Shown piece after piece: positions 5,103 to 52,867 of a stretch of 64,000 nt of DNA. Made by a program: the position numbers and the translations under genes. The notes under the pieces were generated by a model that saw only the letters and a list, made by a program, of their open reading frames with translations, made no database searches and had not been told where the DNA came from. Position 1 is the stretch's first letter, and each line of letters begins with the position of its first letter. The DNA is from Octopus sinensis (lineage: Eukaryota), in NCBI RefSeq assembly GCF_006345805.1, contig NC_043001.1, forward strand, positions 45,818,001 to 45,882,000, in the 5' to 3' direction.

Positions 5103-5202
5103 CTTTTGCAGTATATTGGAAATTAAGGACACCATTTGCATTATGGTGGCAATGTCAAAGCAAGGAAACATTAACACACATGCACACACAACAACACATA
5201 TA

Positions 5203-5343: not shown

Positions 5344-5564
5344 ACCTATATTCAAATATAGATACATATACATGTGTATATGTGTACATAAATACATATG
5401 TATGTGTATATAAAAATGTATATATATGTGTATGTATATCATGATCATCATCAACATTTAACAGCCGCTGTCCATGCTGGTATGGGTTGGATGGTTTGAC
5501 AGAGCTGGTAAGCTGAGGGGCTGCACCAGACTCCAGTCTGATATGCCTGACACACACACACACA

Positions 5565-9632: not shown

Positions 9633-10727
9633 TTTTTTATATATATATATACACACACACACATAATCATAAGAGTTACAGGTACGTTTGAAATAAAATT
9701 TCCAATGTAGATATTTTTTTTTGTTATTGATACAAAGACAAAATATAACCTGGTTGAAATGTGATATAAACAATATTTGCACATATATATTATGTTGCTC
9801 CTCCTCCATAACGAGTTAAAATCTTCAACAATACTAATAACTGCTTCAAAATGTTGGCATAAGGCAAGCAATTTAGTGGGTGTGCAGGTGTCTATTAAAT
9901 TGACCTCAGTACTTAATTTTATCGATGTGATTTAAACTTAGAACGTAAATACTAGAATAAATATTGGAAGTTAATTTTCCAACAATAACGAACGTGCCAA
10001 TTCACTTCCCTCAACTATCTAAATAATAAATGAACTTTTAACATAAGCACAAGGCCATGAATCTGGGAATGGGTTTAGTCAAACCAACCCTAGTATTTGA
10101 CTGGTACTGTATTTCATCTGACTAGAAAGATTTGAACTCAGGACGTCAAAAGTCAGAAGAAACAGAGAAAGGTATTTTTTTTTAAACCTAATATTTCAAC
10201 GATTCTGTTAGGTGATCGCCCAAGTAACAATTGTTTCTAACGTAGCTGCAAGGCCTGAAATGGATTTGTGTGTGTGTGTGTGGGGGGGGGGGGTTGATTA
10301 TATCGACCCAGGAAGGATAAAAAGCTAAGTTGGCCTTAGTGCGATTTGAACTTAGAGCATAAAGGGATGTAATTAAACACTGCAAGACATTTGTCCGGCG
10401 TTGTATTCTGATACTCCACTCAATAATAATAATTATTATTCTCATACAGGCACAAGGCAATCGAAGTAATATAACTTTTTAAAAATAAATTAACTGTTTT
10501 GAACTGTTGTTTTGGCCTATCATCGTCCTCTTTATTGGTAAAGGTATACACACACACACATGATAGATAGACAGATACATAAAAATGAAGCTTCTCGAAA
10601 CGTACCAACACAATGAGAAACGTCAAAATCAGTGCTTACACTACTTCAGGTAGTTATTTTTTCCGTTTGTAACGACTATCTGTTGTCTACCTGTCTTCGT
10701 CTTTTGTTTTTTCTTGTGAATTCTCAC

Positions 10728-14920: not shown

Positions 14921-15230
14921 CTTGGCTTAAGTGGTTAGCGTATTCAGCTCACAGTCGTAAGCTGATTAATGGCAGTGTGTTGTGTCCTTGAGCAAGACTT
15001 TTATTTCATGTTGCTCTAGTCCACTTAGCTGGAAAAATGAGTTGTACCTGTATTTCAAAGGACCAACCTTGTCAAATTCTGTGTCATGCTGAATCTCTTT
15101 TAGAACTACATTAAGGGTAAACATGTTTGTGGTGTGCTCAGCCACTTGCTTGTTGATTTTTATGAACAGGCTGTTCCATTGATTGGATCAACTGGAACCC
15201 TTGTTGTAACCAATGGAGTTCCATGCACAT
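14921..15230 (+). mobile_element. tRNA/CORE-like SINE, family C
   Basis: A-box-like tggcttaagtgg and core tgtccttgagcaag. Confidence 0.7.
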
Positions 15231-15348
15231 GTAATAAATATATGTATGTATATGTATATACACTCACGCATATATATATCACGGTTTCAGCCAGACTATC
15301 TGATGTTGTTATACACCACTGGTCTCAATGTGTTTTGTACTGTTCAAG

Positions 15349-15388
<40 letters not shown>

Positions 15389-15393
<5 letters not shown>

Positions 15394-17026: not shown

Positions 17027-17070
17027 GAACAATCAAATCAAATCATATATCAGAAAGCAGGGGTTAAGTG

Positions 17071-17618
17071 ACCCATCCGTTCGTGTCCGCTGTCAGCCTC
17101 GTCTGGCACCCGTGCCGGTGATACGTAAAAGCACCATTCGCTCATGGCCGTTTGCCAGCTCTGCCTGGCCCCGTGTCGGTGGCACGTAAAAGCACCATCC
17201 GTTCGTGTTCGTTGCCAGCCTCGCCTGGCCCCGTGCCGGTGACACGTAAAAGCACCGTCCGTTCGTGGCCGTTTGCCAGCTCTGTCTGGCTCCGTGTCAG
17301 TGGCACGTAAAAGTACCATCCGTTCGTGGCCATTTGCCAGCTCTGTCTGGCCCCGTGTCGGTGGCACGTAAAAGCACCATCCGTCCGCGTCCGTTGCCAG
17401 CCTCGGCTGGCCCCCGTGCCGGTGACACGTAAAAGCACCGTCCGCTTGTGGCCGGTTGCCAGCTCTGTCTGGCCCCGTGTCGGTGGCACGTAAAAGCACC
17501 ATCCGTTCGTGTCCGTCGCCAGCATCGCCTGGCCCCATGCCGGTGACACGTAAAAGCACCATCCGTTCGTGGCCGTTCGCCAGCTCTGTCTGGCACCTGT
17601 GCAGGTGGCACGTAAAAA
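17071..17618 (+). repeat. Nine 60/61-bp tandem units of two types (B-A-B-A-A-B-A-B-A') in the RTE 3' UTR
   Basis: acgtaaaa ends at 17130, 17191, 17251, 17312, 17373, 17434, 17495, 17555 and about 17618. Confidence 0.95.
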
Positions 17619-17792
17619 ACACCCACTACACTCGTGGAGTGGTTGGCGTTAGGAAGGGCATCCAGCCGTAGAAACACTGCCAGATCTGACTGGGCCTGAC
17701 GGAGCCTTCCAGCTTCACAGACCCCAGTTGACCCGTCCAATCCATGCTAGCATGGAAAGTGGACGCTAAACGATGATGATGATGATGATGAT

Positions 17793-24100: not shown

Positions 24101-24480
24101 TGAGGAGATCTATTGAGTAAGTAAAATCAAAAATCAAAATGGAAATTGTAGTTGTGGCCGATGCCAGTGCCACCTGACTGGCTCCCATGCTGGTGACATG
24201 CAATAAGCACCATTCATGCATGGGTCATTGCTAGTGCTACCTGACCAGCTCCCTGTGCTGGTGGCACGTAAAAAAGCACCATCCAAATGTGGTTGATGCC
24301 AGCCTGTCCCTCGCTCTGACTGGCTCCTGTGCCAGTAGCATGTAAAAAGCACCCAGCTGTAGAAACCTTCCCAGACCAGATTGGAACCTGGTGTAGCCTC
24401 CTGGCTTGCCAGTTCCCAGTCAAACTGTCCAATCCATGCCAGTATGGAAAAGGGATGTTAAACAATGATGATGATAATGA
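21180..24480 (+). mobile_element. Near full-length decayed RTE LINE (APE endonuclease + RT + PHD-like finger + 3' UTR); same family as 15389
   Basis: RVGTVNV, ISAYTPH, VAGDFNGH, IDFIL, FVDLEKAFD, LLYADDL, C4HC3 block, (GAT)n tail; many stops and frameshifts. Confidence 0.92.
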
Positions 24481-26793: not shown

Positions 26794-27854
26794 TTTCAAA
26801 GTAAGAAAAGAAAAGAGCTTTCACTTTTTGCTTGGAAGTTGGAATTCTCAACCAATGAAAACAAATGACTCAAGAGACTCCTGTATACACTTAGTTGTAA
26901 AATTAGAGGGTGGACTTTAAAAATCTGAAGGATAAAATGAAGAGATCTCGGATGCCTTTACAGGAATTGATTTGATTTAACATCTACATTGGTACAGAAC
27001 TTATGTGTTTATCTAAACTAAATAAGTGGGAGATAACATGTATAAAAAGATGTTCTTAAGGGTTAAAGAACTAGAGTATTGAATAAGAATATGTTTACTT
27101 ATTAGTAATTGTAAAACTTCCATTTCCACCGGCTTTTTCTTTAGTCTTCAAGAGAAAGCTTTCACCTTCATTTACTTCGCAGCCAACTCCACACTGCACA
27201 CATTTTGTTTTAGGCAAATCTCTTACAGTTTTATCCCTGCACCCTTCCAGGTATACAACCTTGCATACAATCATAGCTAAGTGCAAGAGTACCTTCACTG
27301 GCTTCAAACCAACAAAGCCACCAGTCATGAAAGTGTCTTTCAAATGCCTTCAAGCATTGCATCCAAGAGTTAGCCCTTATATTCTCCAAAATTTGCAAGG
27401 TATACCTACACAAGTGTGGCCCCTGTGACTGTGTTTCTCATAACTTCCAGAAAAATGGATATTTTTTTAATGAAAGTTTCTATAAATGCGTTTCAGATGA
27501 TATAGATTCCGATTACATTTGTGAATTTTTGAAAAACATTTTTCCATGGGTGGGGAGAAGAATTTAGGTAAATTCACACAAGTCAGCTTTGTTTCCTCAT
27601 AACATACAGAAAAATGAAGATCTTTTAATGAAATTTTCTACAAATACCTATCAGATAATGTAGATTACCATTATATAAGACATATGAAGTGTTTAGGTGG
27701 TGCCCTCAGAGAAAATTAATGTTGAAGACTGAATTCCCTAATTACCGACTAGTCAACAAAAATCGCTCATAAACTGACTCAAAAACAAAAGTATTTGCAT
27801 AAATGCTTTCTACTTACAGCCTATTCTTGGTGACCCATTTGCTGTTATAATCAT

Positions 27855-29105
27855 TATCATTTAGCATCTGTTTTCAATGCTGGCATGGGTTGGACAGTTT
27901 GACTGAAAACTGGTAAGCTGCACCAGGTTCCAGTTTGATTAGGCATGGTTTTAACAGCTGGATGCCCTTCCTAATGTCAACCACTCCAAAAATGTAGTAA
28001 GTGCTTTTTATGTGCCAGTTATATAACACTGGTATTGGCCATGACTACAATCTCACTTGTCTTGACAAGTCTTCTCAAGCACATTTGAATGGTGCTTTTT
28101 ATGTACCAGTTATGTGGAGAAAATCCCTGGAGAAGGACATCATGCTCAGAATGGTCAGTGGCAAGGGGAGGCTGACCAAGAACCCACTGGCTTGACACCA
28201 TCAAGAGTGACACAGGAATGGCCATAGCCAATCTGAAAGAAGTGACCCAGGATGAAACTGGCTGGAGAACACTGATCCATCGAGTAACCGAGAGTCGACT
28301 TTGACTGAACGGATAGATGCAACGCTGGCATCAGCCATGACTATGATTTCACTTGGCTTGACGATTCTTCTCAAGCATGGCATATCACCAAAGATTTCCA
28401 TCACTTGTCATTGCCTCTGTGAGGCCCAACGTTCGACAGTCATGCTTCACCACCTCATCCCATGTCTTTCTAGGTTTACCTCTTTCACAGGTTCCCTCTA
28501 CTGCTAGAGTATGATGCTTCTTCACACAGCTGTCCTCATCCATATACAACACATTACCATACCAGTGTAGTTGTCTCTCTTGCACATCACATCTGATGCC
28601 TCTTATGTCCAACTTTTTTCTCAAGACGCTTACACTCTGTATGTATGCACACTGACATTACACATCCAGTGAAGCAGACTAGCTTCATTTCTTTCAAGCC
28701 TACACATGCTCTTGTTGGTCACAGCCCATGTTTCACTGCCATGTAGCATGGCTGTTCGTACACAGGCATTATACAATCTGCCTTTCACTCTGAGAGAGAA
28801 GCCTTTTGTTACCAACAGAGGTAGGAGCTCTCTGAACTTTACCCAGCCTATTCTTATTCTAGCAGCTATGCTCTCAGAACATTCATCCCAGCTACTGACT
28901 TGGTCACCTACATAATGGAAGTTCTCAACTACTTCTAGTTTTTCCCCTTGGCATTTGATGGAGTCTATTTTCTGTACATTTTTAGTGTTAATTGTACCTG
29001 TGCACCTTCCACACACAAAAATTATTTTCCCTGTTAACCTTCCTTTGATATTGCTGCATTTCTTATGTGTCCATAGCTTACACTGGGTACATCTTATGGA
29101 GTTTC
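27855..29105 (-). mobile_element. RTE 3' portion (PHD region to tail), decayed
   Basis: Minus ORFs 28630-29016 and 28385-28624 match the C-terminus of the 15389 ORF; tail at 27855. Confidence 0.9.
28111..28319 (+). mobile_element. Nested 3' fragment of a BovB-like RTE
   Basis: RKSLEKDIML.MVSGK..PRTHWLDTIK...WRTLIHRVTESRL*LNG*. Confidence 0.65.
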
Positions 29106-29989: not shown

Positions 29990-30072
<83 letters not shown>

Positions 30073-30232
30073 GACAATGGGCTTCTTTCAGTTTCCGTTT
30101 ACCAAATCCACTCACAAGGCTTTGGTCGGCCCAAGGCTATAGTAGAAGACACTTGCCCAAAGTGCCATGCAGTGGGAACGAACCCAGAACCATGTGGTTG
30201 GTAAGCAAGCTACTTACCACACAGCCACTCCT
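29810..30232 (-). mobile_element. CORE-type SINE, family B, with internal (TA)n
   Basis: tRNA-like head, ctttgggcaagtgtc core, microsatellite, body and gaaacaagtaaaaga tail; compare 32527-32850. Confidence 0.85.
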
Positions 30233-30251
30233 GCACCTATACATATACATA

Positions 30252-30292
<41 letters not shown>

Positions 30293-30294
30293 CA

Positions 30295-30640
30295 TCACCA
30301 CTGTTGTTTAACGTCTGCTTTCCATGCTAGCATGGGTTGACTGAGAACTGGCAAGCTGGGAGGCTGCACTAGGCTCCAATCTGACTTGGCAAGGCTTCTA
30401 CAGTTGGATGCCCTTCCTAACACCAGCCACTCAGAGTGTAGAGGGTGCTTTTTATGTGCCACCGGCACAGGAGCCAGTCAAGTGGCACTGGCAATCGGCC
30501 ACATTTGAATGGTGCTTTTTACGTGTCACCAGCATGGACGCCAGTCAGGTAGCACTGGCATCAGCCACGACTACAATTTCACTCGGTTTAACAGGTCTTC
30601 ACAAGTATGGCATATCTCCAAAGGTCTCAATGTTTGATGG
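30295..30640 (-). mobile_element. RTE 3' UTR and tail
   Basis: gtttaacgtc..ccatgctagc..ggatgcccttcc. Confidence 0.8.
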
Positions 30641-30934
30641 TTGTGCTCCACCACCTCATATATATATATATTTATTTGCTGCCCCTCTTAGTCTTGCAAG
30701 CTACACAGCAACTTCAATAGTGTTGGCTGCATGAACAAAGCACCCTGTATGCACTGCAAAGTCATTGGCATTAGGAAGGGCATTGAGTTGCAGAAACCAT
30801 GCAAATACTGGAGTATGATGCAATCATTGGACCATCTTGGATTCTGTGAAACCATCTAATTGAAGCAAGTATAGAACATAGACATTCAATGACAATGATG
30901 TTTTATCTATCTACCTATCTATCTGTCTCTCTCT

Positions 30935-31250
30935 CATCATCATCGTTTAACGTCCGCTTTCCATGCTAGCATGGGTTGGACGATTTGACTGAGGTCTGGC
31001 AAACCAGATGGCTGCACCAGACTCCAATCTGATCTGGCAGGGTTTCTACAGCTGGATGCCCTTCCTAATGCCAACCTCACCAAGAGTGTAGTGGGTGCTA
31101 TTACGTACCACTGGCACAGAGGGCCAGTCAGGTGGTACAAGCAATGACCACGATCAAATGGTGTTTTTTATGGCAACGACCTCGCTTGAATGTTTTTTCA
31201 CGTGCCACCAGTGCCAGTAAGGTGACGCAGGTAACAATCACAATCTCTCT
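30935..31250 (-). mobile_element. RTE 3' UTR and tail
   Basis: (CAT)n-cgtttaacgtccg..ggatgcccttcc. Confidence 0.85.
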
Positions 31251-32242: not shown

Positions 32243-32314
32243 TTATATGAAAAAATAAGGTATTCAGAGACCTTATTTTTTCTAATATATAATATCTATA
32301 CATCACCTCCAAAA

Positions 32315-32476
32315 GCACCCACTACACTCTCAGAGTGGTTGGCATTAGGAAGGGCATCCAGCTGTAGAAACTGCCAGATCAGATTGAAATCTGGTGCAGC
32401 CATCTGGTTTGCCAGATGTCAGTCAAATCGTTCAACCCATACTAGCATGGAAAGCGGACGTTAAACGATGATGATG
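32315..32476 (+). mobile_element. RTE 3' tail
   Basis: aaagcacccactacactctc...ggacgttaaacgatgatgat. Confidence 0.85.
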
Positions 32477-32526
32477 GTGATATATATATATATAGATATA
32501 TGTATATATATATATATGTATGTATG

Positions 32527-35689: not shown

Positions 35690-36405
35690 AGTGAAAGTAA
35701 CAGAAGATATTATTTGAGGTATTACACGGTGAGATTGAATGATGAACTAAAAGATCCTGCAGTTGGGAATTGGTTTAGAGAAATTTTGACACATTTGATG
35801 ACTGTTAGGAGAAAGATGTAGACATCTGTAGCATAGATGACAACTGGGAATTTCAATGCAATAACTTGCTTGAGGTAATGTGTTGATGAAATGATACAGT
35901 TGATAGGGCAATAAAGGCTAAAGACAAATTTGAAAAACTGGAAGGTAAGAAAGATGGTGGGGACCATTATCAAATGGCTAAGCAGCTAGGCAACTGATAT
36001 CCTAGGCTAAGGGTGAGATAGAAAGGAAAAGATTTGTGCATGTCATGCAACATAAAAATCAGAAGCACGAAATGCTCAGAACTGCGAGGTAGTGGGTGAA
36101 AAGGAACAGGGACGTCATTGATAAGAAACGTATCTGGAATGCCAACAATATGTAGAACGAAAAACTAGCATGGAAGTGGTAAAGAGGGTATACATTATGC
36201 TGACGCCACAGAGGGACTGGCAATTCAAGTTGAAAGCAGCAAGGTAGATAAAGTGAAAGACAACAAAAGAGACAGTTGCAGAAGTGTTCAAAATATGTGG
36301 TGAGTTGAAAATATTATCACCTGGATAATCAATCAAGTTATGCAGGAATGTGTCATACCCAATGACTGGCATAGTGACATTATCACAAAGGCAAAGGAGA
36401 TGCGC
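35690..36405 (+). mobile_element. Decayed RTE linker/RT-start fragment
   Basis: Homologous to 21900-22700 (gtcatacccaatgactggcatag). Confidence 0.7.
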
Positions 36406-37569: not shown

Positions 37570-37779
37570 AAATCTATAAAAATCGAGACTAAGCAGTGGT
37601 TTTCGTAGTGTTACAAAATTAAGCTTTTATGCGTATATATTTCGCTCTAGCTCTTTTATAATGTAAACCCCAAGTTCCTGATTTAGATCTAATTTTAATA
37701 ATGTAGCTCAGACACCTCCCATCCATACGAAATACGTAAATTATAAAATGCTTTCAGTATTGTTTTCAGTTTGTCAATT

Positions 37780-38240
37780 GCGCTCATTGGTTAAGTCCAC
37801 CTCCGGGACAACACGGAAAGGACCACAGAAAAACGACATACTACATACGCCCAATTTGCAATTGAATCATTTTACACAGCTGCCTGCCGAGAAAAGTTAA
37901 AGTGAGTCAATTACCATTTTATAGTATACAGGCGTACCTCAACATATTTCTGAAAGACAAGCGACTTAACCAAAAAGAAAAAAATGTAACTTGAAAAAAC
38001 ATTTAAAAAATTATATTCACTTAGTTTTTCATATGTTCACACATCTTGTATTTACCTTTCCGCTTCAGTATGAGTTTTAGGTATTTCTATTTTTATTTTT
38101 ATGCTTTTAAATATGTTTGCTGAGACCGACGTAAAGTCAAATAAATCGACTGAAGTTGAAGTGTAATTTTTCCGTTGACTTCTTTAAAAAATGATGTCGA
38201 AAAAGATGTAACTCGAAATTACGTAAATTGAGGTATGCGT
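37780..38240. promoter_or_regulatory. Candidate (bidirectional) promoter and 5' UTR exons of the zinc-finger gene
   Basis: CpG-retaining unique DNA; ATTGG 37786, CCAAT 37851; plus donors at 37902 (gtgagt) and 38233 (gtatgc); minus donor at 38055 (gtaaat). Confidence 0.4.
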
Positions 38241-42100: not shown

Positions 42101-42294
42101 TGCGACCAATTACCATGATAACAAAAATTCTCACACATGGCTTCAATACAGTTTTAACAGAAAGATTTGGAAGAATTCGATGAAAGTTCCCTGGTAATTT
42201 TCTTTCATGTAAATAAATGTTTCTGTTAATTTAAAAATTTGCCAGCAAAATCTTAGAAAATGACAATGTTCTAAAAGATGTACGTGTTTATGTT

Positions 42295-42500
42295 CATCAT
42301 CATCATCATCGTTTAGCGTCCGTTTTCCATGCTAGCATGGGTTGGACGGTTCTACTGGGGTCTGTGAAGCCAGAAGGCTTCATCAGGCCCAGTCAAAATC
42401 TGGCAGTGTTTCTACGGCTGGATGCCCTTCCTAACGCCAACCACTCCGTGAGTGTAGTGGGTGCTTTTTACGTGCCACCCACACAGGTGCCAGACAGAGC
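42295..42500 (-). mobile_element. RTE 3' tail (young)
   Basis: (CAT)n-cgtttagcgtccg; close to the reverse complement of 17590-17792. Confidence 0.9.
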
Positions 42501-43598
42501 GAAAATTTTTAAATAGATATAGGAAACTAAACAAAATACCCATCATAGACAGGGAATTGGTGTTAATGTTTCTGAACAAACAATAGGCAGAATATCTGAC
42601 TAAACCCATATAACCTGTTTTTCTACAAACTTTATTTGAATTTCTGATTTTAGCAGCAGATTATATTCTGGGGAAAAAACGGAATGTTTTGAATCTCACT
42701 TCTTTTAATCCTAAACATAATACTAAATGCTAAACCTTAAACTCTAAAACTTAACCTTACCCTAAAATACTAATCAGAATCATGTTGCAAGGGACCTAAC
42801 ATAAGTACTTCCTACTTAATTTATTATTGCCTGTACCATTGTTAACAAACTTAATGATGTTTTGCCATTTTCAACCAGACAAATGTCTGAATTTATAGAT
42901 TGATTAATGAATGAGACATGTAAAAATGATCTTGTGAAAATATAATTAAACTGTCATTCTCTCACTTCTTTTGTATTTCTAACAGCAAGTCCTCCTTCCT
43001 GAATTATTTAGACATCTACCACCAGGTCATTTATATAACTGAACTCACCCATTATATAGCTAATCTATTTGTTCACAAGGATTATTATGAGATGAATATG
43101 GATATCTCATTACATAATCAATATTATATAATTGATAAGACAACAAGTGTGCAGAACCATTAGCAATCTGGGTGAAATGCTTAGTGGCATTTTGTCCATC
43201 TTCATGCTCTGAGTTCAAATTCTGCTGAGGTCAACTTTGCCCTTCATCTGTTTGGGGAGGATAAAATAAGTACCAGTTGAGTACTAGAGTCAATGTAATT
43301 AACTTACCCCCTCCTCAGAAATTGCTGGCCTTGTTCCAGAATTTGAAACCAATATTATATAATTGATATGATAGTATCATTTCTCTCTTTCATGTTTTCA
43401 TGCATATTATATTGTTTGTCACTCTTATGTTATTGGAACAATTGTAATCCATGGAATAAATGTAATACCAAAAGCCCTATTCTTCACCTTTTATACACAT
43501 GCACACACACACACACACACACACATACACACATGCACGCACACACACATGCACACACATTGTTTTATATGACTTATTCTTTTAACTTCAGTACTACA

Positions 43599-43772
43599 AT
43601 GGCCTGCAAGACTCCCGAAACTTTGGAAGAAATTCATTATCCAACTTGTGAAGATTCCTTGAGTGAAAAAACTAGTGTCAGTTATCAGTCATATATTGCT
43701 CTTTTAGATGAAATGACAAATCTGAGGAAAATAATAGACTCCTGTAAGAATTTTTCTGAAAAACCTGTTAAG
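43599..43772 (+). CDS. Coiled-coil/C2H2 protein, coding exon 1 (MACKTP...SEKPVK, 58 aa)
   Basis: Acceptor ttcttttaacttcag|43592, ATG 43599, donor AAG|gtaggt; phase 0. Confidence 0.75.
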
Positions 43773-44129
43773 GTAGGTTACAGTTTAAATTTTTAATTTT
43801 CTTTTTCCTTTCTATCTTTACCTACTTCTGTGTGTGTGTGTATGTGTGTGCGTGTGTGTATGCACATTTACATATGTGGAAAATTCTGTATTTGGGTGTG
43901 TTTGTTTGTGGAGTTGTTAGCTAACATGATTTCATATAAATTAAATTGAGTATGCTTATTTCTTAGTATTTGAACTGTTAGTTATTTTCGCAATTTATCC
44001 TGTATAACCCTTAAACAAATAAATAGTATTTTTCTAAACAATAGATCCACTTATTTCGGTTAGTGACTTATTCATGAATATACTATGAATGACTATGCCT
44101 TTCATGTCACTTCAGTCAATTGACAAGCG

Positions 44130-45130
44130 CTGCATGAAGAACTGTTCTGCTTTTAGACAAATGCACTGTCAGCACAAAAGTCACACCCTGTTTACATGTA
44201 GGAACACCTTAAAATTTATCTGTTTATCTTGAAAACGGCCAGCATGTATATTTCACAGAAGACAATGTTCGAAACGTAGTTCTGAATCCACTAGAAACCA
44301 CTTTGACAGCTCTCTTCAAATTATGTCAATGTGATCTGTTTGCCTGAACACTGTTGTATGTAGAGGTCCCCGTGTACTCTACCTGGGCACAGAATAGATG
44401 GAAGAGACACAAGCAAGGAACACACCTTGAGGGCTGGGAAGAAGATGCTGTCTTCAGAAGTGGGGCCATTGGGCGGGTGTATATTGTGCACCCTAATCGG
44501 CAGGAGTGCTTCTTTCTGCATCTACTGCTACACCCTATCAGACACAATGGGAAGTCTGCATGACCTATAGAGAAGCCTGCGCCAAACATGGACTACCGGA
44601 GGACAATGCTCACTGGGACCAGACACTGGAGGAGTCAGCGCAGCACTAAGTCAACTGCACCAGCTATTTTCTATCATATTGATGACATGTGGCTTGCATG
44701 AACCTCACAAGCTTGGGCAATCCACAAAACCAGCATAGCAGAGGACATCTAGAAAGGATTCAAAGGCAAACCTCAGCGGAAATTGCCATGTACAATAATG
44801 CCACTTACAATGAGGCATTACTTGACCTGGACACACAAGATCAAGCTATGGGAGGTCAAGGCAATTCCACATTTGGTTATTACATAACTAACTTCACAAT
44901 TTGGGAATTCCTAAGACAGTTCAGTATTCTCTGTAAATGCACAAAAACCGTTTTTAGGGCTACATACTTTGTATTGTTATTGGATTAGTGAAACAATTAT
45001 GAGAACAGAACCAAGGGATAAGCCCCACTTTTCCAGGAATTACCAGGTATGTCAGCTAGTAAATACATATGTCAGAGGTTACTGAGTATTCCCTACACAT
45101 ACAATGTACAAGGCATCCTATCTTTTATGC
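44130..45130 (+). mobile_element. Helitron RepHel relic (intronic)
   Basis: HLENGQ.VYFTE, TTLTA.FKLCQ, YVEVP..W..RKQG..IGRVYIVHP..ECFFL.LLLH, TYREAC..GL.EDNAHWDQTLEE. Confidence 0.85.
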
Positions 45131-45459
45131 TTGGCACCCTACACACAATCTAGAGTGATTGGTGACTAGAAGAAAAGTAAGATTGAGAGGTTCCTTACTC
45201 CTCTGTCATTGAGGGCTTCACAATCTCCCTTGTGTTGGTGTCACGAGAAAAAACAACTGGTACACTCTGTAAAGTGTTTGACAATAGAAAGGTATCTAGA
45301 AAGGGTATCTAGCTTTGGAAGCTAAACCAAAGTCACACAAACCCCAGTGTTTGAGGGTAGTTGCTCCCAATAAGAAAGAACTTGGATTGTGATTACACAG
45401 CCAACTCATGCCAGTCTGGAAAGCAGATATAAAAATGATCAGAGTGCTATATGGCTGTG

Positions 45460-45840
45460 TGTTTAAGAAGTTTGTTTCCAAACTGCATGGTTTCAGGCTC
45501 AGTTCAACATTGGCAAGTGTCTCCTACTATAGCCCTGGGCTGACCAAAGTCTTGTGAGTGGATATGGTAGATGGAAACTGAAATAAGCCTGTTGTTTATA
45601 TGTGTATATGTGCGCAAGTGTGTGTTTGTGATTCCTTGTCTTGACATCACATGATTGTTGTAAATAAATGTCATTCATTTCCAGTATTCTGTGAACACAT
45701 GTCTGGCTATGAGAAAATATTACCTTGCTTGGAAATGGGTAAGGTTTAGCAACAGGAAGGTCATAGAAAATCTGCCTCAATAAGCTCCATCTGACCCATG
45801 CAAGCATGGAAAAGTGGCCATTAAAATAATAATGGTGATA
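45460..45840 (+). mobile_element. Family B CORE-type SINE ending in an RTE-like tail
   Basis: ttggcaagtgtc core, (TG)n, then gacccatgcaagcatggaaaagtggccattaaa. Confidence 0.75.
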
Positions 45841-46170
45841 TATCTTCACAAGGAAAATGTTGACAATGACTTAGTTTTACTGGTTATTGGCTTCACCATC
45901 TGATGAAAATAAACATAGTACTCTATTTAAATGTATTGAGTGATTCTTCTATTAATGTTTGGCTGTTTTTATAGATACCCTTGCCTTTACTACCTCTTCC
46001 CCATTATTCTTCTAACACACTGTTTCTTTCTATCTCTCTCTTCTTCCCACTCTATCATCCTAGTCATTGTTCATCCCCACCTTACTGTCATACTTCCTTT
46101 TCTTTCTCCCTTTTACCTTTCATCATCATCTTCAATTTTTCTCTCTTTTTCTCACTTTATTTGTCTAAAC

Positions 46171-46687
46171 CAGGGGTGGGGAAACTTTAGTGTGGTGGGC
46201 AAAAATTTTCTAAGAAAAAGGTCTGCAGGTGGATCACAGGTTCTAACTCTTATATCTGTGTAAATCTTGTATATATCTATGTATAATTTGATATTCATTA
46301 AGAAAGATAAGTTTAACACATTAAATTAATGCGTTACATCTTCATTAATGCTGCCACTGAATTTAGGACGTTTATAATACTTATAAAGTATTCTATTTCT
46401 TTCAGCTAAAGTGTAGTTGGGTCTGAAAGGGGTGGTATAAACCTAGCAATATGTGTTTTATAGTGAAAACGAAATTTCCATTCAAATGGCAATTACTAGA
46501 TGATTTCTGACCATTTTAAGTCGTAGTGGAAATGTGACCTATGTTGCAAATAGGTGTACGAATATTGTATAAATTTTGATTGAAAAATTTACTATATTTT
46601 GTACATATGAGTATATCAGCCTGTGGGCACAATAAAATGGGTTCACAGGTGCAATTGTGTCTGTGGTTGGGGGTTTCTCTACCCCTG
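46171..46687. mobile_element. hAT (Charlie-type) MITE
   Basis: TIRs caggggtggggaaac / gtttctctacccctg; 8-bp flanks gtctaaac / gtgaaaac (6/8). Confidence 0.7.
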
Positions 46688-46920
46688 GTGAAAACAAATG
46701 GATTTCTGTAGCATTATGAAATCTTTCAATCCTGAAATGAGATATTAGAGTAAATGCCACACGCAGGGAATACCATAGGAATATTTGAACTGGTGATGCT
46801 TAAGAGTTTAGGGGCTTTATGCCATATGTAACTTATCACTTTCAACATCAATAATTTATAGGGGAAAACATTGTTATTGTATTATTTTGCTTAATTAAAA
46901 AAAAATCATTTATTTTTCAG

Positions 46921-47016
46921 TTTGATGCTTGTATGCAGACAACAGAAGCATTAGAATATGAAGATATGCTACGTTGTTTGGCTTCTGCTTATGATGCAAA
47001 ACAAGAAGACTGCAAG
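46921..47016 (+). CDS. Coding exon 2 (FDACMQ...KQEDCK, 32 aa)
   Basis: tatttttcag| ... AAG|gtaatt; 96 nt, open, phase 0-0. Confidence 0.8.
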
Positions 47017-47364
47017 GTAATTCATTAAAATTCATCACTTTCCATCCTAATCTAGGGTCAGTTCTTAGTCCAGTTGCCTCAATGATAGTTAAAAAAAGTA
47101 TTTTAGTTCGGTGTTTACCATTTTTGCTAACTTATTGTCCTCAAGCCAATGAAGCAGCCTCTATGTGGTCACTCAACCTGTCTTAAAAAAGAAGTGTTGG
47201 TATTGTGTAGTCATAGGTGAACAATAAGACCTGATTGTCATGACTGGAAAGCCTTAAGTCTTAGGTATGCTTAATCAGACCTGAGCTGCAGCTAAACTAC
47301 AATAACAGCTTATCACTTGTTTATGGAAAATATTGATTATGTTTTGTTATTTTTTTCTTTCAAG

Positions 47365-47421
47365 AAACTAGAAATGAAACTGAAAGATTCTGAAGAAATA
47401 ATCAAAGAACTCTATGAGAAG
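47365..47421 (+). CDS. Coding exon 3 (KLEMKLKDSEEIIKELYEK, 19 aa)
   Basis: ttttttctttcaag| ... AAG|gtaaat; 57 nt. Confidence 0.8.
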
Positions 47422-47763
47422 GTAAATAAATATATTGTTTCTTATTTGGAGATTTTCCTTCCCTGTGTCTGAGGAGTTGATTATCTTTGAAGCAGTGTGT
47501 GCGTGGGAGGGAGGGAGGGAGGGTCATTTAAAGAATATTATGAATATGGTGTTATTGTTTAGCCAAGTATTTCTCAACCTTTTGTCTCTTGTCACCCACT
47601 ATTCATTATTTTACATCTCCAAACCCATATCCAGCAACGATCATTACAAGTACACCTCAACAAATTCAATCCAACTCATACCAGCATGGAAAAGTGAACA
47701 TTAAAAACAATGATGATACAAACACACACACACATAGTTTGTTTTTGACTTTCTATATGTGTG

Positions 47764-47810
<47 letters not shown>

Positions 47811-47854
47811 TCTGAAATCTTAACCCTTCTTTTGTTTTTCTTCCCATCATGCAG

Positions 47855-47938
47855 CTGGATAAAGTAATGCAAGACTTGAAGTCTGAGAAAGAAGAATGTA
47901 ATCATTTGAAACAATTAAACATGGTGACTGGAACACTT
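47855..47938 (+). CDS. Coding exon 4 (LDKVMQ...MVTGTL, 28 aa)
   Basis: ttcttcccatcatgcag| ... |gtaagt; 84 nt. Confidence 0.8.
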
Positions 47939-47991
47939 GTAAGTGAACAGTAATTTTTTATCCTGCTCTACTGCATCCTTCTTGGTCACTC

Positions 47992-48235
47992 ATCATCATC
48001 ATCATCATCGTTTAACGTCCGTTCTCCATGCTAGCATGGGTTGGATGGTTCGACCGGAGATCTGGGAAGCCAGAAGGCTGCTCCAGGCTCCAGTCTGATC
48101 TGGCAGTGTTTCTACAGCTGGATGCCCTTCCTAACGCCAACCACTCTGTGAGTGTAGTGGGTGCTTTTTATGTGCCAGGCGAGGCTGGCAATGGCCACAA
48201 TCGGATTGGTGCTTTTTACGTGCCATCGGCATATC
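47992..48235 (-). mobile_element. RTE 3' tail in intron 4
   Basis: (CAT)n-cgtttaacgtccg..ggatgcccttcc. Confidence 0.85.
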
Positions 48236-48499
48236 TCCATACTCATATCTCCATACTCATATGTTGGCCCAAACTCCACTAGGCTGTGTCATTTTGTTGT
48301 TATTCTTGTTGTTTAGCTCCAAGCTGGTTCTGAATATGTGTTTCTATTTTTAAAACTGTTGGTGATTATTTGAAGAACTTGGCAACTACTACTGGTAGGT
48401 GAGACTCACATGGAGTATTGCTTTCAAATCACCTCCACCAGCTTTTACATACTCCCCCAACAACACCAATTTTAACAAGTCTATCAGTAAATGTGATCT

Positions 48500-49050
48500 G
48501 GATATTATTGACAACAGTAATCTGCATTGGATAAACCACATCTCTAAGATTGTCAAGAAGGCTTAAGGTGTCTTAGCATTACTCAGTAAGACCTTTGTCA
48601 GCTGCTCTCCAGCTATCTGTTTAAAGTTGTACATGACTATGGTATGTCCATACTTAGAGTTTGTATCACCAGTCTGGAACCCCTATCTTGCTCAGCATAT
48701 CAATCTCCTGAAAACTGTTCAGAAACATGCAACCAAAGGAATACCAGCCATCAGGCATCTACCATACTCTGAACATCTTGCTTCCCTGGGCATGGACACA
48801 TTTACGTTGACATCTGGCAACTGACTTGGTAGATACCCACAAGATTATCAATCATCTTTCCAACAACAACCTTGGGTATCTTTTTGAATTCCATACATCT
48901 AACACTCATGGACATGCTTACAAAATCAAAAAACAACACAGCACCCATGGCTTTTGGAAACATTTTTTCATGCTCAGGATTGCTGAACCATAGAATAAAA
49001 TACCTACATCAGTTGTTAGTAGTTGAGATACTACATCCTTCAAAACTTCC
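48500..49050 (+). mobile_element. CR1-clade LINE C-terminal fragment
   Basis: LYMTMVCPYLEFVSPVWNPY...VQKHATK..LPYSE.L..L. Confidence 0.8.
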
Positions 49051-49712
49051 ATCATCATCATCATCATCGTTTAATGTCCGCTTTCAGTCTGATCTGAAAT
49101 TCTCCAACAGTACACCCGATGCCCCCACCCTTGTTTCTTCTTCCATTTTTTTAAAGACTTTTTCACTGTTCATTTCCTGTGCATACTCTATGTACTGTTC
49201 ATGATGAGTTGTAGTGCACCTGAACACTGTATACAATAAGATCATTATATATCATTATATTCTGTTGATACTACCTCCAATTATTCTACTCTATAAACTA
49301 TGTCATCAAAATTACTACACCTTGTCTTTCCACAACCTTACTATGGCAGACAACCAGCCCAACCTAATGATACACTTCTGTCATCTCTTTCTATTTCTAA
49401 GCAAACACTTCAGTCTTTACATTTAGATAGAACCTTTAGCATTCATATTACCCTTTCAAATGTAATGCTTATTTGTTTACATTGTTTTTAATTAATCATG
49501 CATTATCTCATAGCATTGAGATTTCAATGGTGTGATTGTTTATTTTTAGAATGATTGTAGGGTAGGTGTGAGGGACCAGATTCTAGCTGGTTTGAACAGA
49601 AAATGGGTAGAGTATTTGGGTTGGATATGGCCAGTTTAAATTCTAAGGTGTCAATACTGGGGACTTATTTCCTTTGTTAATTTAAAAAAAATTTTTTTTT
49701 TTACATTTACAG

Positions 49713-49916
49713 AATACTATGATGGCATCCCCCAGCAGAAGCTGTTCTACTGCAAGTCAACTGCATTCTAAGCCATGCCGTCAACCTTCTGAGCTGCGAG
49801 TCGATTGTGCACCGATGAGCACTGTTAGAAACTATGAATGTTTAGTTTGTCAGCAAACCTTCAACAACGAGGCAGATTTGAAAGAACATCAGAAGAGATA
49901 TCATTTAAACAAATGA
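49713..49916 (+). CDS. Coding exon 5 with C2H2 zinc finger and stop (67 aa)
   Basis: tttttacatttacag|AAT ACT ATG; YECLVCQQTFNNEADLKEHQKRYH; TGA 49914-16. Confidence 0.85.
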   Translation, partial: NTMMASPSRSCSTASQLHSKPCRQPSELRVDCAPMSTVRNYECLVCQQTFNNEADLKEHQKRYHLNK

Positions 49917-50224
49917 GTGTATGTATAAATAGTGTGGTTAGACATTGCTTTTTTCTGTGTAACACATCAAAGTGCACAATATGCTCTCACCATAGCATCA
50001 TTCTATATTGACTTTTGATGCAAACATTTTTACCAAAGCTGACTGAAGATGACAAAATCCAAATTCCTGGATTTTAGCATGAAACCATAGTATGGAAGTA
50101 ATGATACACACATGCACACACACACACACACACATACACACACACACACACACACATACACACACACACACAAACATGAATACACACGCACGCGTGCACG
50201 CACACACAGAAGTATACATATGAG

Positions 50225-50530
50225 AAGTCTTTTTCAGCTTCCATATACCAAGGTTCCATTCACTCACAAGGCTTTGATTGGCCCAGGGTTATAGAAGTCA
50301 TGCACTCAAGGTGCTGTACAGTAGGATTGAACCCAAAACTACATGGTTTGAAAGGAAACTTTCTTTTCTTTAACCATAATGTGTCTGTTTGACTGCATGG
50401 CTGTGTGGTTAAGAAGCTTGCTTCCAACCATGTGGTCCCCTCTGCATGACGCCTTGGATGGGTGTCTTCTATAGCTTGGGCTGACCAAAGCCTTGTGAGT
50501 GGATTTGGTAGACGGAAACTGAAAGAAGTG
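50225..50530. mobile_element. Head-to-head pair of family B SINEs
   Basis: Minus copy about 50225-50376, plus copy 50398-50530 (continues to about 50780). Confidence 0.75.
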
Positions 50531-50914
50531 TGTTGTATATGTTTATATATATTTATATATGTACCCCTTGTTTTTACATCATGTGATAATGGTAAATAAG
50601 CATCACTGTCATACAATTGATGCTGTTCATTTTTCTGTTCTCTCTCATGAAATATTACTTTGCTTGGAAGTAGGTGAGGGTTGGCAATAGGAAGGATATT
50701 TGTCACATTGAAAATTTGCTTCAATAAATTTCATCTGCTCTACCATTCAATCACGAATAAGAGAACATTAAATGAACAATAGGTTACACACACACACACA
50801 CATACATACTTTACATGCATATATATATATTTATATACATATATACACACACATATATACACATAGATAAGTACATACACACATACATACATATATACAC
50901 ACACACACACACAA

Positions 50915-51488: not shown

Positions 51489-51674
51489 TAAAAGAATTTG
51501 AATAACACCTGCGTTTAACTCTATTTATATATTATACAAAATATTTCATGTAAACTTGGAGTTTCTACCTTTAGAAACAAGAAGCTGCACCCTTTTTACT
51601 TGTGTGATTTTTTTTTGCTACCCTGGTAACTATTTATCTATTTTTTCTATGTTAATTGTTAATAAGGGAAAAAT

Positions 51675-51685
<11 letters not shown>

Positions 51686-51751
<66 letters not shown>

Positions 51752-51775
51752 ATATATATATATATAATATATATA

Positions 51776-51806
<31 letters not shown>

Positions 51807-51823
51807 CATATTATATATATATA

Positions 51824-51899
<76 letters not shown>

Positions 51900-51936
51900 T
51901 ATATAATATATTATATATAATACATATATATATATA

Positions 51937-51983
<47 letters not shown>

Positions 51984-52028
51984 TATATATATAATATATA
52001 CACATATACATATATATATATATATATA
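51686..52028. repeat. Long imperfect (TA)n microsatellite, about 340 bp
   Basis: Direct inspection. Confidence 0.95.
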
Positions 52029-52325
52029 GTGGAGGTACATGGCCTAGTGGTTAGAGCAGAGGACTCGGATCACAGGTTCGAATCTCAGACTGGGCGATGT
52101 GTGTGTTTATGAGCGAAACACCTAAGCTCCACGCAGCTCCGGCAGAAGGTAATGGCGAACTACTGCTGACTCTTTTGCCACAACTTTCTTTCACTCTTTC
52201 CTCCTGCATCTTGCAGCTCACCTGCGATGGACCGGCGTCCTGTCCAGGTGGGGAACCTATGTGCTTAGGAAACCGAGAAACCGGCACTATGAGCCAGGCG
52301 TGGCTTGAGAAGGAACAAACAACAA
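52028..52325 (+). mobile_element. tRNA-headed SINE (family C variant), near complete
   Basis: A-box tggcctagtgg, B-box ggttcgaatct, gatggaccggcgtcctgtccag body, (AAC)n tail. Confidence 0.85.
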
Positions 52326-52382: not shown

Positions 52383-52416
<34 letters not shown>

Positions 52417-52423
52417 CATCATC

Positions 52424-52768
52424 ATCATTTAGCGTCCGTTTTCCATGCTAGCATGGGTTGGACGGTTTAACTGGGGTCTGTGAAGCCGGAAGGCTTCATC
52501 AGGCCCAGTCAGATTTGGCAGTGTTTCTACGGCTGGATGCCCTTCCTAACGCCAACCACTCCGCAAGTGTAGTGGGTGTTTTTTACGTGCCACCTGCACA
52601 GGTGCCAGACAGAGCTGGCACAACGGCCACGAACGGATGGTGCTTTTACGTGTCACCGGCACGGGGCCAGGCGATGCTGGCAACGGACACGAATGGATGG
52701 TGCTTTTACGTGCCACCGACACGGGGCCAGACAGAGCTGGCAAACGGCCACGAACGGACGGTGCTTTT
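52424..52768 (-). mobile_element. RTE 3' UTR with three 60/61-bp units and tail
   Basis: Reverse complement of about 17450-17792. Confidence 0.92.
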
Positions 52769-52867
52769 ACACACACATACATACACATATACATGCATGC
52801 ATGCATACATACATACATATCATACATTCATATATATACCTATATAGATATCTATATATATATCTTT

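What the first reader, a model, noticed from the sequence alone, without database searches (positions are those of the whole stretch)
43599..49916. Hidden five-exon gene: 204-aa coiled-coil protein with one C-terminal C2H2 finger
Seen: exons of 174, 96, 57, 84 and 204 nt join through four phase-0 GT-AG introns with no internal stop; exons 2-4 are invisible to the ORF track. Exons 2-4 give an E/K/L-rich heptad region, followed by an S/P-rich linker and Y-x-C-x2-C-x3-F-x5-L-x2-H-x4-H. I do not recognise an orthologue. Inference: the architecture recalls TANK/AZI2/TAX1BP1-type adaptors (weak AY..K..LKDSE resemblance) or a lineage-specific gene, unlike tandem C2H2 arrays.
Basis: partly seen in the sequence, partly recalled or inferred. 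Interest (0 to 1): 0.7.

Follow-up and report, generated by a model that had tools for sequence, protein, structure and literature searches.

The report
Annotated octopus-only coiled-coil zinc-finger gene
The five-exon gene is real, but it is already in RefSeq as an uncharacterised Octopus sinensis protein (LOC115211581), it has relatives only in other octopods, and it shows no demonstrable kinship to TANK/AZI2-type immune adaptors.

Summary
Exons 43599-43772, 46921-47016, 47365-47421, 47855-47938 and 49713-49916 (+) join in phase 0 through GT-AG introns into a 204-aa ORF.

The gene is not hidden. The product is identical to RefSeq Octopus sinensis LOC115211581 isoform X3. The gene is also larger than reported, with alternative 5' exons back to about 10.6 kb.

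All five exons and their boundaries are conserved in O. vulgaris, O. bimaculoides and Argonauta hians, while the introns are not alignable. dN/dS is about 0.4 in the helical core, about 1 in the Ser/Pro linker and 0.07 in the finger within Octopus. Argonauta has replaced both zinc-binding histidines.

Searches of 5.8 billion protein clusters and 1.84 billion representatives find only these octopod orthologues.

The TANK/AZI2 resemblance fails every formal test: Pfam TBD gives no hit, hhalign gives 1.5% probability, and BLASTP gives E=0.076. Only a weak, partial match to the first half of the TBK1-binding domain remains (8 bits).

Best reading: a fast-evolving, octopod-restricted coiled-coil scaffold. 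Its conserved N-terminal helix-loop would be the main interaction surface, and the terminal classical C2H2 finger an accessory, dispensable module. Function is inferred, not shown.

The parts
10585..10649 (+). Alternative 5' exon. It carries the upstream ATG of RefSeq isoform X1 (MKLLETYQHNEKRQNQCLHYF). The donor gt is at 10650. The 5' edge of the exon was not determined.
   Evidence: tblastn gives 100% identity over 21 aa. The sequence and donor were read. The final 'ag' joins 't' at 43592 to make the Ser codon of '...HYF-S-TTM'.
36295..36299 (+). Candidate 3' end of the alternative 5' exon of isoform X2 (MC-TTMACK): ATGTG|gtgagt.
   Evidence: Pattern search. This is the candidate closest to the coding exons and the only one of the seven ATGTG|GT sites with a gtgagt donor. 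This is inference, not confirmed by transcript data.
37745..37901 (+). Alternative 5' exon, homologous to the N-terminal extension of O. vulgaris and O. bimaculoides isoform X1. The donor gt is at 37902.
   Evidence: tblastn gives 94% identity to O. vulgaris (2e-18) and 79% to O. bimaculoides. The sequence was read.
43592..43772 (+). First coding exon. It is an internal exon with acceptor cag| at 43591/43592. The conserved start codon is at 43599. It encodes residues 1-58: a disordered acidic tail followed by helix alpha-1.
   Evidence: The ATG is conserved in all four species.
43677..43748 (+). Codes for residues 27-50 (VSYQSYIALLDEMTNLRKIIDSCK). This is helix alpha-1, the most conserved stretch of the protein and the site of the weak TBD-like half-motif.
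   Evidence: Invariant columns. AF2 helix 29-50. Custom TBD HMM hit at residues 30-44, 8.0 bits.
46921..47016 (+). Coding exon 2, residues 59-90. It covers the conserved loop (FDAC.QTTEA) and the start of the long helix.
   Evidence: 85% DNA identity to Argonauta.
47365..47421 (+). Coding exon 3, residues 91-109. Coiled-coil helix containing KLKDSEEII.ELYEK.
   Evidence: 87% DNA identity to Argonauta.
47855..47938 (+). Coding exon 4, residues 110-137. End of the coiled-coil helix.
49713..49916 (+). Coding exon 5, residues 138-204 plus the stop. It encodes a disordered Ser/Thr/Pro linker with invariant Cys148, Cys159 and Cys169, followed by the C2H2 finger.
   Evidence: dN/dS of the linker is about 1.
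49833..49904 (+). Codes for the single classical C2H2 finger, residues 178-201 (YECLVCQQTFNNEADLKEHQKRYH).
   Evidence: Pfam zf-C2H2 at residues 178-201, 22.7 bits against a cut-off of 25.2. AF2 beta-beta-alpha fold with pLDDT about 78. Both His are replaced in Argonauta.
49917..50745 (+). Probable 3' UTR. An AATAAA signal lies at 50723.
   Evidence: Pattern search. 84% identity to O. bimaculoides across the region. The poly(A) site itself is inferred.

Best explanation
This is the protein-coding gene LOC115211581 of Octopus sinensis. It is a fast-evolving gene found so far only in octopods (Octopus and Argonauta).

The product is a small protein of 204 aa with five parts:
- a disordered acidic N-terminal tail (residues 1-25);
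- a highly conserved amphipathic helix and loop (27-68);
- a helix of about 75 residues with heptad periodicity (66-141);
- a neutrally evolving Ser/Thr/Pro linker with three invariant cysteines (142-176);
- one classical C2H2 finger at the extreme C-terminus (178-201).

The most likely mode of action is inferred, not shown. The long helix would pair into a parallel coiled-coil dimer, making a non-enzymatic scaffold or adaptor. The conserved helix-loop 27-68 would be the principal partner-binding surface. The two flexibly tethered fingers would add a zinc-dependent accessory contact, more likely with a protein than with DNA. That contact is maintained in Octopus but has been given up in Argonauta.

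My confidence differs by layer. That it is a real, annotated, constrained gene: about 0.97. That it is restricted to octopods or cephalopods: about 0.75. The scaffold mechanism as stated: about 0.45.
For: Gene reality:
- The ORF is identical to RefSeq isoform X3.
- Exon number, lengths, phases and splice sites are conserved in four species.
- Exons 1-4 align to Argonauta at 81-87% identity, while the introns do not align.
- The exons are single-copy and not derived from transposable elements.

Constraint (Nei-Gojobori method):
- Whole gene: dN/dS 0.48-0.55.
- Core, residues 26-133: 0.37-0.43 against Argonauta, with 72% amino-acid identity.
- Linker: about 1.0.
- Finger: 0.07 within Octopus (2 nonsynonymous against 4 synonymous changes).

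Restriction to octopods:
- phmmer finds only three octopod clusters among 5.8 billion.
- A full-length profile at E<=10 finds the same three among 3557 candidates.
- A core profile against 1.84 billion representatives finds only the family itself.
- A PDB profile search finds nothing meaningful.

Architecture:
- AF2 predicts helices 29-50 and 66-141 (pLDDT 85-97), disorder at 142-175, and a beta-beta-alpha finger with pLDDT about 78.
- Heptad register: 13 of 23 a/d positions are strongly hydrophobic, shuffle p=0.011.
- Foldseek returns only isolated classical C2H2 fingers, all with E>0.7.

Finger as an accessory module:
- In Argonauta, H196 is Leu and H201 is Met. These are multi-nucleotide changes, and no alternative reading frame restores a finger.
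- AF2 gives no hairpin in Argonauta and pLDDT below 50 up to residue 186.
- C180, C183, F187 and L193 are retained in Argonauta. This suggests a finger was ancestral and decayed in that lineage.

Finger unlikely to read DNA:
- It is a single finger.
- The base-contacting helix positions -1, 2, 3 and 6 are N, A, D and E. This is read from the sequence and interpreted from established knowledge of Zif268-type fingers.
Against: No experiment or transcript data were available here, so splicing rests on RefSeq models and cross-species conservation.

Dimerisation was not modelled, because only monomer AF2 was available. The heptad signal is only moderate.

dN/dS of about 0.5 is high, and the counts per region are small.

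The claim of octopod restriction depends on which cephalopod proteomes are in the libraries. Squid, cuttlefish, Vampyroteuthis and Nautilus genomes could not be searched at the DNA level.

The finger's strong conservation within Octopus could mean it is the key functional module there, not an accessory one.
Confidence: 0.55

Rival explanations
1. It is a very diverged or convergent TANK/NAP1(AZI2)/SINTBAD(TBKBP1)-type adaptor. Helix alpha-1 would bind the C-terminal coiled coil of an octopus TBK1/IKK-epsilon kinase. The coiled coil would dimerise the protein, and the terminal finger would bind ubiquitin, as in TANK.
For: The architecture is similar: a coiled coil plus one C-terminal zinc finger, as in TANK and TBKBP1.

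I built an HMM from 13 TBK1-binding domains. The human TANK and TBKBP1 entries were validated against Pfam TBD at E=2.4e-26 and 6.9e-21. Run without filters, it aligns model positions 8-22 to residues 30-44 (QSYIALLDEMTNLRK), the most conserved stretch of the protein. The score is 8.0 bits, reached by 0.14% of 20,000 composition shuffles. For O. bimaculoides the figure is 0.095%, and for Argonauta 3.3%.

The aligned Leu35 and Leu42 correspond to NAP1 L226 and L233. Mutating either of these abolishes TBK1 binding (PMC5027247).
Against: - Pfam's own TBD model gives no hit at E<=10 for the whole protein or for the excised region.
- Only the first half of the domain aligns. The positions equivalent to NAP1 L244 and L247 are Ser53 and Pro56, and the predicted helix ends at residue 50. 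In NAP1, L244Q largely decreased or abolished complex formation, and L247 forms the ninth layer of the interface.
- hhalign against an alignment of AZI2 proteins that includes the TBD in several members gives 1.5% probability.
- BLASTP against AZI2 residues 1-152 gives E=0.076 and 0.42 for a single comparison.
- The motif was noticed after looking at several regions, so the shuffle fraction overstates its significance.
- The finger spacing is classical, not TANK-like, and the finger is lost in Argonauta.
- In one search the AZI2 family was retrieved only from vertebrates.
Confidence: 0.08
2. It is a nuclear nucleic-acid-binding regulator. A coiled-coil dimer would present two C2H2 fingers to DNA or RNA. 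The finger exon would have been captured from the hugely expanded cephalopod C2H2 repertoire.
For: The finger matches classical DNA- and RNA-binding finger models: zf-C2H2 at 22.7 bits, zf-met at 20.4 and zf-C2H2_jaz at 17.4. The nearest PDB sequences and folds are Krüppel-type fingers. C2H2 genes are massively expanded in octopods (PMC12513265). The finger has the lowest dN/dS within Octopus.
Against: - There is one finger per chain, with no TGEKP linker and no flanking basic region.
- Acidic residues sit at helix positions 3 and 6.
- I saw no classical nuclear localisation signal by eye.
- All the Pfam finger scores are below the curated cut-offs.
- Both His ligands are lost in Argonauta while the rest of the protein stays conserved.
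- Exon 5 has no second copy in the 200 kb of sequence examined.
Confidence: 0.15
3. It is not a functional protein. On this reading it is a non-coding or decaying transcript whose ORF is kept by chance and carried forward by automated annotation.
For: The overall dN/dS is high (about 0.5), and the linker evolves neutrally. There are no homologues outside octopods. The finger has decayed in Argonauta. No source in the cluster listing comes from assembled sequencing runs.
Against: - The ORF is intact, with identical exon phases, in four species separated by dS of about 0.58.
- The core has dN/dS of about 0.4 and 72% identity to Argonauta.
- The exons align where the introns do not.
- All splice sites are conserved.
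- The helices are predicted with confidence.
Confidence: 0.04

Closest known systems
TANK / AZI2 (NAP1) / TBKBP1 (SINTBAD), the TBK1-binding adaptors
   Same: They are small non-enzymatic proteins built from coiled coils. TANK and TBKBP1 end in one zinc finger. Residues 30-44 weakly resemble the first half of the TBK1-binding domain (8 bits).
   Different: There is no significant sequence or profile similarity. The second half of the TBD is missing (Ser53 and Pro56 stand in place of NAP1 L244 and L247). The protein is much shorter: 204 aa, against 425 aa for the TANK sequence used and about 390 aa for AZI2 and about 615 aa for TBKBP1 from memory.
TAX1BP1 / CALCOCO2 (NDP52) autophagy receptors
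   Same: A coiled coil followed by C-terminal C2H2-type fingers.
   Different: There is no SKICH domain and no Pfam hit to their finger or coiled-coil families at E<=10. No ubiquitin-binding zinc finger (UBZ) structure appears among the 50 Foldseek matches shown.
NEMO / optineurin
   Same: Dimeric coiled-coil adaptors that end in a single zinc finger.
   Different: Their finger is CCHC, and they carry the UBAN/CC2-LZ motif. Neither is present here: there is no Pfam hit and no PDB profile hit.
Classical Krüppel-type C2H2 zinc fingers (Pfam PF00096)
   Same: The finger has the canonical Y-x-C-x2-C-x3-F-x5-L-x2-H-x4-H pattern and a predicted beta-beta-alpha fold.
   Different: It is a single terminal finger attached to a coiled coil, not a tandem array. 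Its score is below Pfam's cut-off (22.7 against 25.2). The His ligands are not conserved in Argonauta.
EEA1 (one C2H2 finger plus a long coiled coil)
   Same: A single C2H2 finger on a coiled-coil dimer that is used for protein binding (Rab5). The EEA1 finger appears among the Foldseek matches (ranks 11 and 22).
   Different: Those matches are not significant (E=2.4-3.6). In EEA1 the finger is N-terminal and the protein is about 1400 aa (both from my own knowledge). There is no sequence similarity.

Membership tests
TANK/AZI2/TBKBP1 adaptors | TBK1-binding domain (Pfam TBD, PF12845; NAP1 residues 215-254) | tested here: not met
   There is no Pfam TBD hit at E<=10 for the full protein or the excised region. 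A custom HMM aligns only the first 15 positions, at 8.0 bits. The equivalents of NAP1 L244 and L247 are Ser53 and Pro56.
TANK/AZI2/TBKBP1 adaptors | N-terminal SKICH-binding coiled coil of AZI2/TBKBP1 (SHFALVTAYEDIKKRLKDSE..., PDB 5Z7G) | tested here: not met
   BLASTP gives E=0.076 with two gaps in 24 columns. hhalign of the octopod alignment against the AZI2 alignment gives 1.5% probability and aligns a different region. No PDB hit to 5Z7G appears with either the sequence or the profile.
TANK/AZI2/TBKBP1 adaptors | C-terminal TANK/TBKBP1-type finger (C-x2-C with a long 'FP...' insert, H-x3-H) | tested here: not met
   The octopus finger is C180-x2-C183-x12-H196-x4-H201.
TANK/AZI2/TBKBP1 adaptors | Physical binding to TBK1/IKK-epsilon | not testable with these tools
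   This needs pull-down, ITC or a multimer structure prediction.
Classical C2H2 zinc finger (PF00096) | C-x2-4-C-x12-H-x3-5-H with the conserved aromatic and Leu core, scoring above Pfam's gathering score | tested here: inconclusive
   The pattern is fully present and AF2 predicts a beta-beta-alpha fold. The Pfam score is 22.7 bits, below the 25.2 cut-off.
Classical C2H2 zinc finger (PF00096) | All four zinc ligands conserved among orthologues | tested here: not met
   In Argonauta, H196 is Leu and H201 is Met. No frameshift rescues the finger, and no hairpin is predicted.
TAX1BP1/CALCOCO family | N-terminal SKICH domain and a CALCOCO coiled coil | tested here: not met
   There is no such Pfam hit at E<=10. 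The N-terminus is predicted to be disordered.
NEMO/optineurin/ABIN | UBAN (CC2-LZ) motif and a CCHC finger | tested here: not met
   There is no Pfam hit. The ligands are CCHH in Octopus.
Coiled-coil proteins (structural class) | A long helix with heptad a/d hydrophobic periodicity | tested here: met
   AF2 predicts a helix at 66-141 with pLDDT 85-97. A single register places 13 of 23 strongly hydrophobic residues at a/d positions, shuffle p=0.011. The oligomeric state was not tested.

The most novel reading that the evidence does not exclude
The octopod lineage invented, or diverged beyond recognition, a miniature TBK1/IKK-type kinase adaptor. Its conserved helix 29-50 would be a half-length TBK1-binding motif, and its terminal finger a ubiquitin or partner sensor. 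That would be a lineage-specific component of molluscan innate immune or autophagy signalling.
Probability: 0.07. Interest if true: 0.5.

Novelty: already known. Interest (0 to 1): 0.2.

Why it matters
The finding adds little. The exact protein is already in RefSeq and UniProt as an uncharacterised protein (XP_029635995.1; isoforms X1-X3), with annotated orthologues in O. bimaculoides, O. vulgaris and Argonauta.

What this analysis adds is a description:
- It is a genuine, selectively constrained gene, so far found only in octopods.
- The conserved part is the N-terminal helix-loop and the coiled coil.
- The finger is dispensable in one lineage.
- The TANK/AZI2 analogy is not supported.

It could serve as a tidy example of a young, fast-evolving cephalopod gene, or as a candidate for anyone screening octopus-specific signalling adaptors.

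Tried and rejected
1. Pfam scan of the whole protein and of residues 20-88 at E<=10. It returned only sub-threshold C2H2 models and generic coiled-coil noise, with no TBD, SKICH, UBAN or UBZ families.
2. PDB sequence and profile searches. They returned only generic fingers and a GCN4 chimera at E=0.021.
3. Foldseek of the AF2 model against the PDB. No hit had E<0.7.
4. Not significant.
5. A TBD half-motif that I spotted by eye. It is nominally unusual against shuffles but partial and post hoc, so I kept it only as a low-probability rival.
6. Synteny. tblastx of the Argonauta flanks against the window found only repeats. The upstream Argonauta neighbour has an Aminotran_5 domain, which does not recall any TANK, AZI2 or TBKBP1 neighbourhood that I know. 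I could not test the vertebrate T-box linkage of those genes.
7. Literature search for the locus and accession numbers. Zero papers. A search for invertebrate TANK orthologues found nothing useful.
8. A transposable-element origin for the exons. Rejected, because the exons are single-copy in about 200 kb of sequence.
9. A frameshift or assembly artefact as the cause of the missing His residues in Argonauta. Rejected, because no other frame encodes a finger and the codon changes involve several nucleotides.
10. The bacterial promoter and terminator scan is irrelevant to a eukaryotic locus and I ignored it.

Full report
**1. The observation**

I read window 43400-50100 and spliced the five stated exons. 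They are 43599-43772, 46921-47016, 47365-47421, 47855-47938 and 49713-49916 on the + strand. Their lengths are 174, 96, 57, 84 and 204 nt. Every intron begins with GT after a good donor context (AAG|gtaggt, AAG|gtaatt, AAG|gtaaat, CTT|gtaagt). Every intron ends with a pyrimidine tract plus cag or aag. The joined ORF is 615 nt and encodes 204 aa plus the stop. It ends in Y178-E-C180-L-V-C183-Q-Q-T-F187-N-N-E-A-D-L193-K-E-H196-Q-K-R-Y-H201-L-N-K. The description is accurate.

**2. It is an annotated gene, and larger than the finding**

- A search of 5.8 billion protein clusters returned three hits.
- The cluster listing and sequences show that the 204-aa product is identical to RefSeq 'uncharacterized protein LOC115211581 isoform X3' of Octopus sinensis (XP_029635995.1, P0006). 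The window is therefore O. sinensis.
- Isoforms X1 (228 aa) and X2 (208 aa) differ only by short N-terminal extensions from alternative upstream exons.
- I located these exons in the window at 10585-10649 (donor gt at 10650), at a candidate exon ending ATGTG|gtgagt at 36299, and at about 37745-37901.
The gene occupies about 10.5-50.7 kb of the window. An AATAAA signal lies at 50723.
- The long introns are full of repeats.
- No paper in the library mentions the locus or its accession numbers.

**3. Is it a real, constrained gene?**

- I fetched the orthologous loci of Argonauta hians (L001), O. bimaculoides (L002) and O. vulgaris (L003).
- All five coding exons are present in each, with the same phases and GT-AG boundaries.
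- At the DNA level, exons 1-4 align to Argonauta at 81-87% identity, while introns 2 and 3 give no alignment at all. The exons have no other copy in about 200 kb, so they are not repeat-derived.
- Nei-Gojobori estimates are as follows:

| Region | dN/dS |
|---|---|
| Whole gene | 0.48-0.55 (dS 0.11 to O. bimaculoides, 0.58 to Argonauta) |
| Core, residues 26-133 | 0.37-0.43 against Argonauta (72% amino-acid identity) |
| Ser/Thr/Pro linker, 134-176 | about 1.0 |
| Finger, 177-204 | 0.07 between Octopus species (2 nonsynonymous, 4 synonymous changes) |

- Within the linker, Cys148, Cys159 and Cys169 are invariant.
- The gene is therefore real and under purifying selection, but it evolves fast. 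The counts per region are small.

**4. The finger is not universally conserved**

- In Argonauta the final exon reads ...KECILCLKTFSSAAELRKLKKKCMLD*. C180, C183, F187 and L193 are kept, but H196 is Leu and H201 is Met.
- No other reading frame encodes a finger, and the codon differences involve several nucleotides.
- AF2 predicts a beta-beta-alpha unit for Octopus (pLDDT about 78).
- For Argonauta it predicts only a low-confidence helix, with pLDDT below 50 up to residue 186.
- Because the finger's core residues are retained, the most economical reading is that a finger was ancestral and decayed in the Argonauta lineage. This is an inference, since there is no outgroup.

**5. Structure**

- AF2 was run on the four-sequence alignment and gave mean pLDDT 66.
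- It predicts a disordered tail at residues 1-25, helix 29-50, a low-confidence loop at 54-63, one long helix at 66-141 (pLDDT 85-97), disorder at 142-175, and the finger.
- A single heptad register places strongly hydrophobic residues at 13 of 23 a/d positions over residues 64-141 (shuffle p=0.011). This is consistent with a coiled coil.
- The oligomeric state was not modelled.

**6. Relatives**

- A profile of the core (A1) against 1.84 billion representative proteins found only the family itself.
- The full-length profile (A2) at E<=10 again found only the three octopod clusters among 3557 word-sharing candidates.
- Pfam gives only sub-threshold finger models: zf-C2H2 22.7 bits against a cut-off of 25.2, plus zf-met, zf-C2H2_4 and zf-C2H2_jaz. 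The rest is coiled-coil noise.
- PDB sequence and profile searches and Foldseek give nothing significant.
- On present data the gene is restricted to octopods. One caveat applies: squid, cuttlefish and Nautilus genomes could not be searched at the DNA level with these tools.

**7. Testing the TANK/AZI2/TAX1BP1 idea**

Residues 33-75 are identical to PDB 5Z7G chain C. This is the coiled coil that contains 'AYEDIKKRLKDSE'.
A second weak pairing (AYDAKQEDC against AYHAYREVC) has E=0.42.
- I collected the AZI2 family, which came only from vertebrates, and aligned 12 diverse members (A3). hhalign of the octopod alignment against A3 gives 1.5% probability, and on a different segment.
- The feature that defines this family is the TBK1-binding domain. 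It is found by Pfam in TANK (133-186, E=2.4e-26), AZI2 (215-261) and TBKBP1 (E=6.9e-21). It is not found in the octopus protein or in its excised N-terminal region at E<=10.

By eye, helix alpha-1 (QSYIALLDEMTNLRK) resembles the first half of the TBD (AZI2 AYWELKREMSNLHLV; fish QTYQALCCEVTRLHS).

- An unfiltered search with my own HMM of 13 TBDs gives 8.0 bits, reached by 0.14% of 20,000 shuffles. For Argonauta the score is 2.7 bits, reached by 3.3% of shuffles.
- Only 15 of about 50 positions align.
- L35 and L42 match NAP1 L226 and L233. The positions of L244 and L247 are Ser53 and Pro56, beyond the end of the predicted helix. The L226Q, L233Q and L244Q mutations largely decreased or abolished complex formation with TBK1, and L247 forms the ninth layer of the interface (PMC5027247).
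- I noticed the motif after inspecting several regions, so the shuffle fraction overstates its significance.
- I treat this as a lead with low probability (about 0.08), not as evidence of membership.

**8. Most likely mechanism**

This section is inference.

- The protein has no enzymatic domain.
- Its conserved parts are an amphipathic helix plus loop (27-68) and a long heptad helix.
- Its linker is unconstrained apart from the cysteines.
- Its single finger carries N, A, D and E at the positions that contact bases in Zif268-type fingers. There is no basic flank and no second finger.

This pattern fits a dimeric coiled-coil scaffold or adaptor. The N-terminal helix-loop would be the main binding surface. 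The tethered fingers would provide an accessory zinc-dependent contact, probably with a protein. That contact is kept in Octopus and lost in Argonauta.

The rivals are a diverged TBK1-type adaptor (0.08), a dimeric nucleic-acid-binding regulator that borrowed a finger from the expanded cephalopod C2H2 repertoire (0.15; background in PMC12513265), and a non-functional ORF (0.04).

**9. Verdict**

The TANK/AZI2 analogy is unsupported, and the 'hidden' claim is wrong. The gene is already annotated, though uncharacterised. Interest is low (0.2). The residual novelty lies in an untested possibility that it is an octopod-specific signalling adaptor.

Noticed in passing
window 47990-48260 (intron 4). 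Other copies lie at 42294-42477, 17537-17791, 52415-52661, 30934-31102, 32311-32481, 4233-4398, 30291-30535, 27847-28018 and 24349-24480, with fragments elsewhere.: A SINE-like element of about 250 bp that starts with a (CAT)n run ('catcatcatcatcgtttaacgtcc...'). It is present in at least 12 copies or fragments on both strands, at 74-90% identity. Internal sub-repeats produce the spurious overlapping ORFs at 17050-17740 (-) and 52458-52847 (+).
   Followed up: partly
window 45440-45860, 50397-50780, 30060-30157 and 5152-5344: A second dispersed repeat family at 69-88% identity. It explains the ORFs that share the peptide '...PLTRLWSAQGYSRRHLP...'.
   Followed up: partly
window 15134-17026 (+), 28630-29016 (-) and 21251-21655 (+): A 630-aa ORF of a LINE-type retrotransposon, with RVT_1 at E=6.6e-32 and a weak PHD-like Cys cluster. 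It sits in the long 5' intron of the gene. A partial copy of the same C-terminal region lies on the minus strand at 28630-29016. A possible endonuclease-like fragment lies at 21251-21655, with no Pfam hit.
   Followed up: partly
window 1181-1645 (+): An ORF with helix-turn-helix motifs of the Tc1/mariner transposase type (HTH_Tnp_Tc3_2, HTH_32 and others, all below the curated cut-offs). It is probably a DNA-transposon remnant upstream of the gene.
   Followed up: no
window 43497-43560, 47767-47806 and 51556-52040: Three microsatellites. A (CA)n run lies immediately 5' of the first coding exon. A (TTA)n run lies in intron 3. A long TA-rich tract downstream generates 'YIYIYI' pseudo-ORFs on both strands.
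   Followed up: no
residues 148, 159 and 169 (window 49743-49745, 49776-49778 and 49806-49808): Three cysteines spaced 10-11 residues apart in a linker that otherwise evolves neutrally. They are invariant in all four octopods. Together with C180 and C183 they might form an alternative metal, disulfide or lipidation site. This is unexplained.
   Followed up: no
L001 1-238 (Argonauta hians, upstream of the orthologue): The upstream neighbour in Argonauta is a 661-aa protein with an Aminotran_5 domain. No counterpart is visible in the first 10 kb of the window, so synteny could not be assessed.
   Followed up: partly
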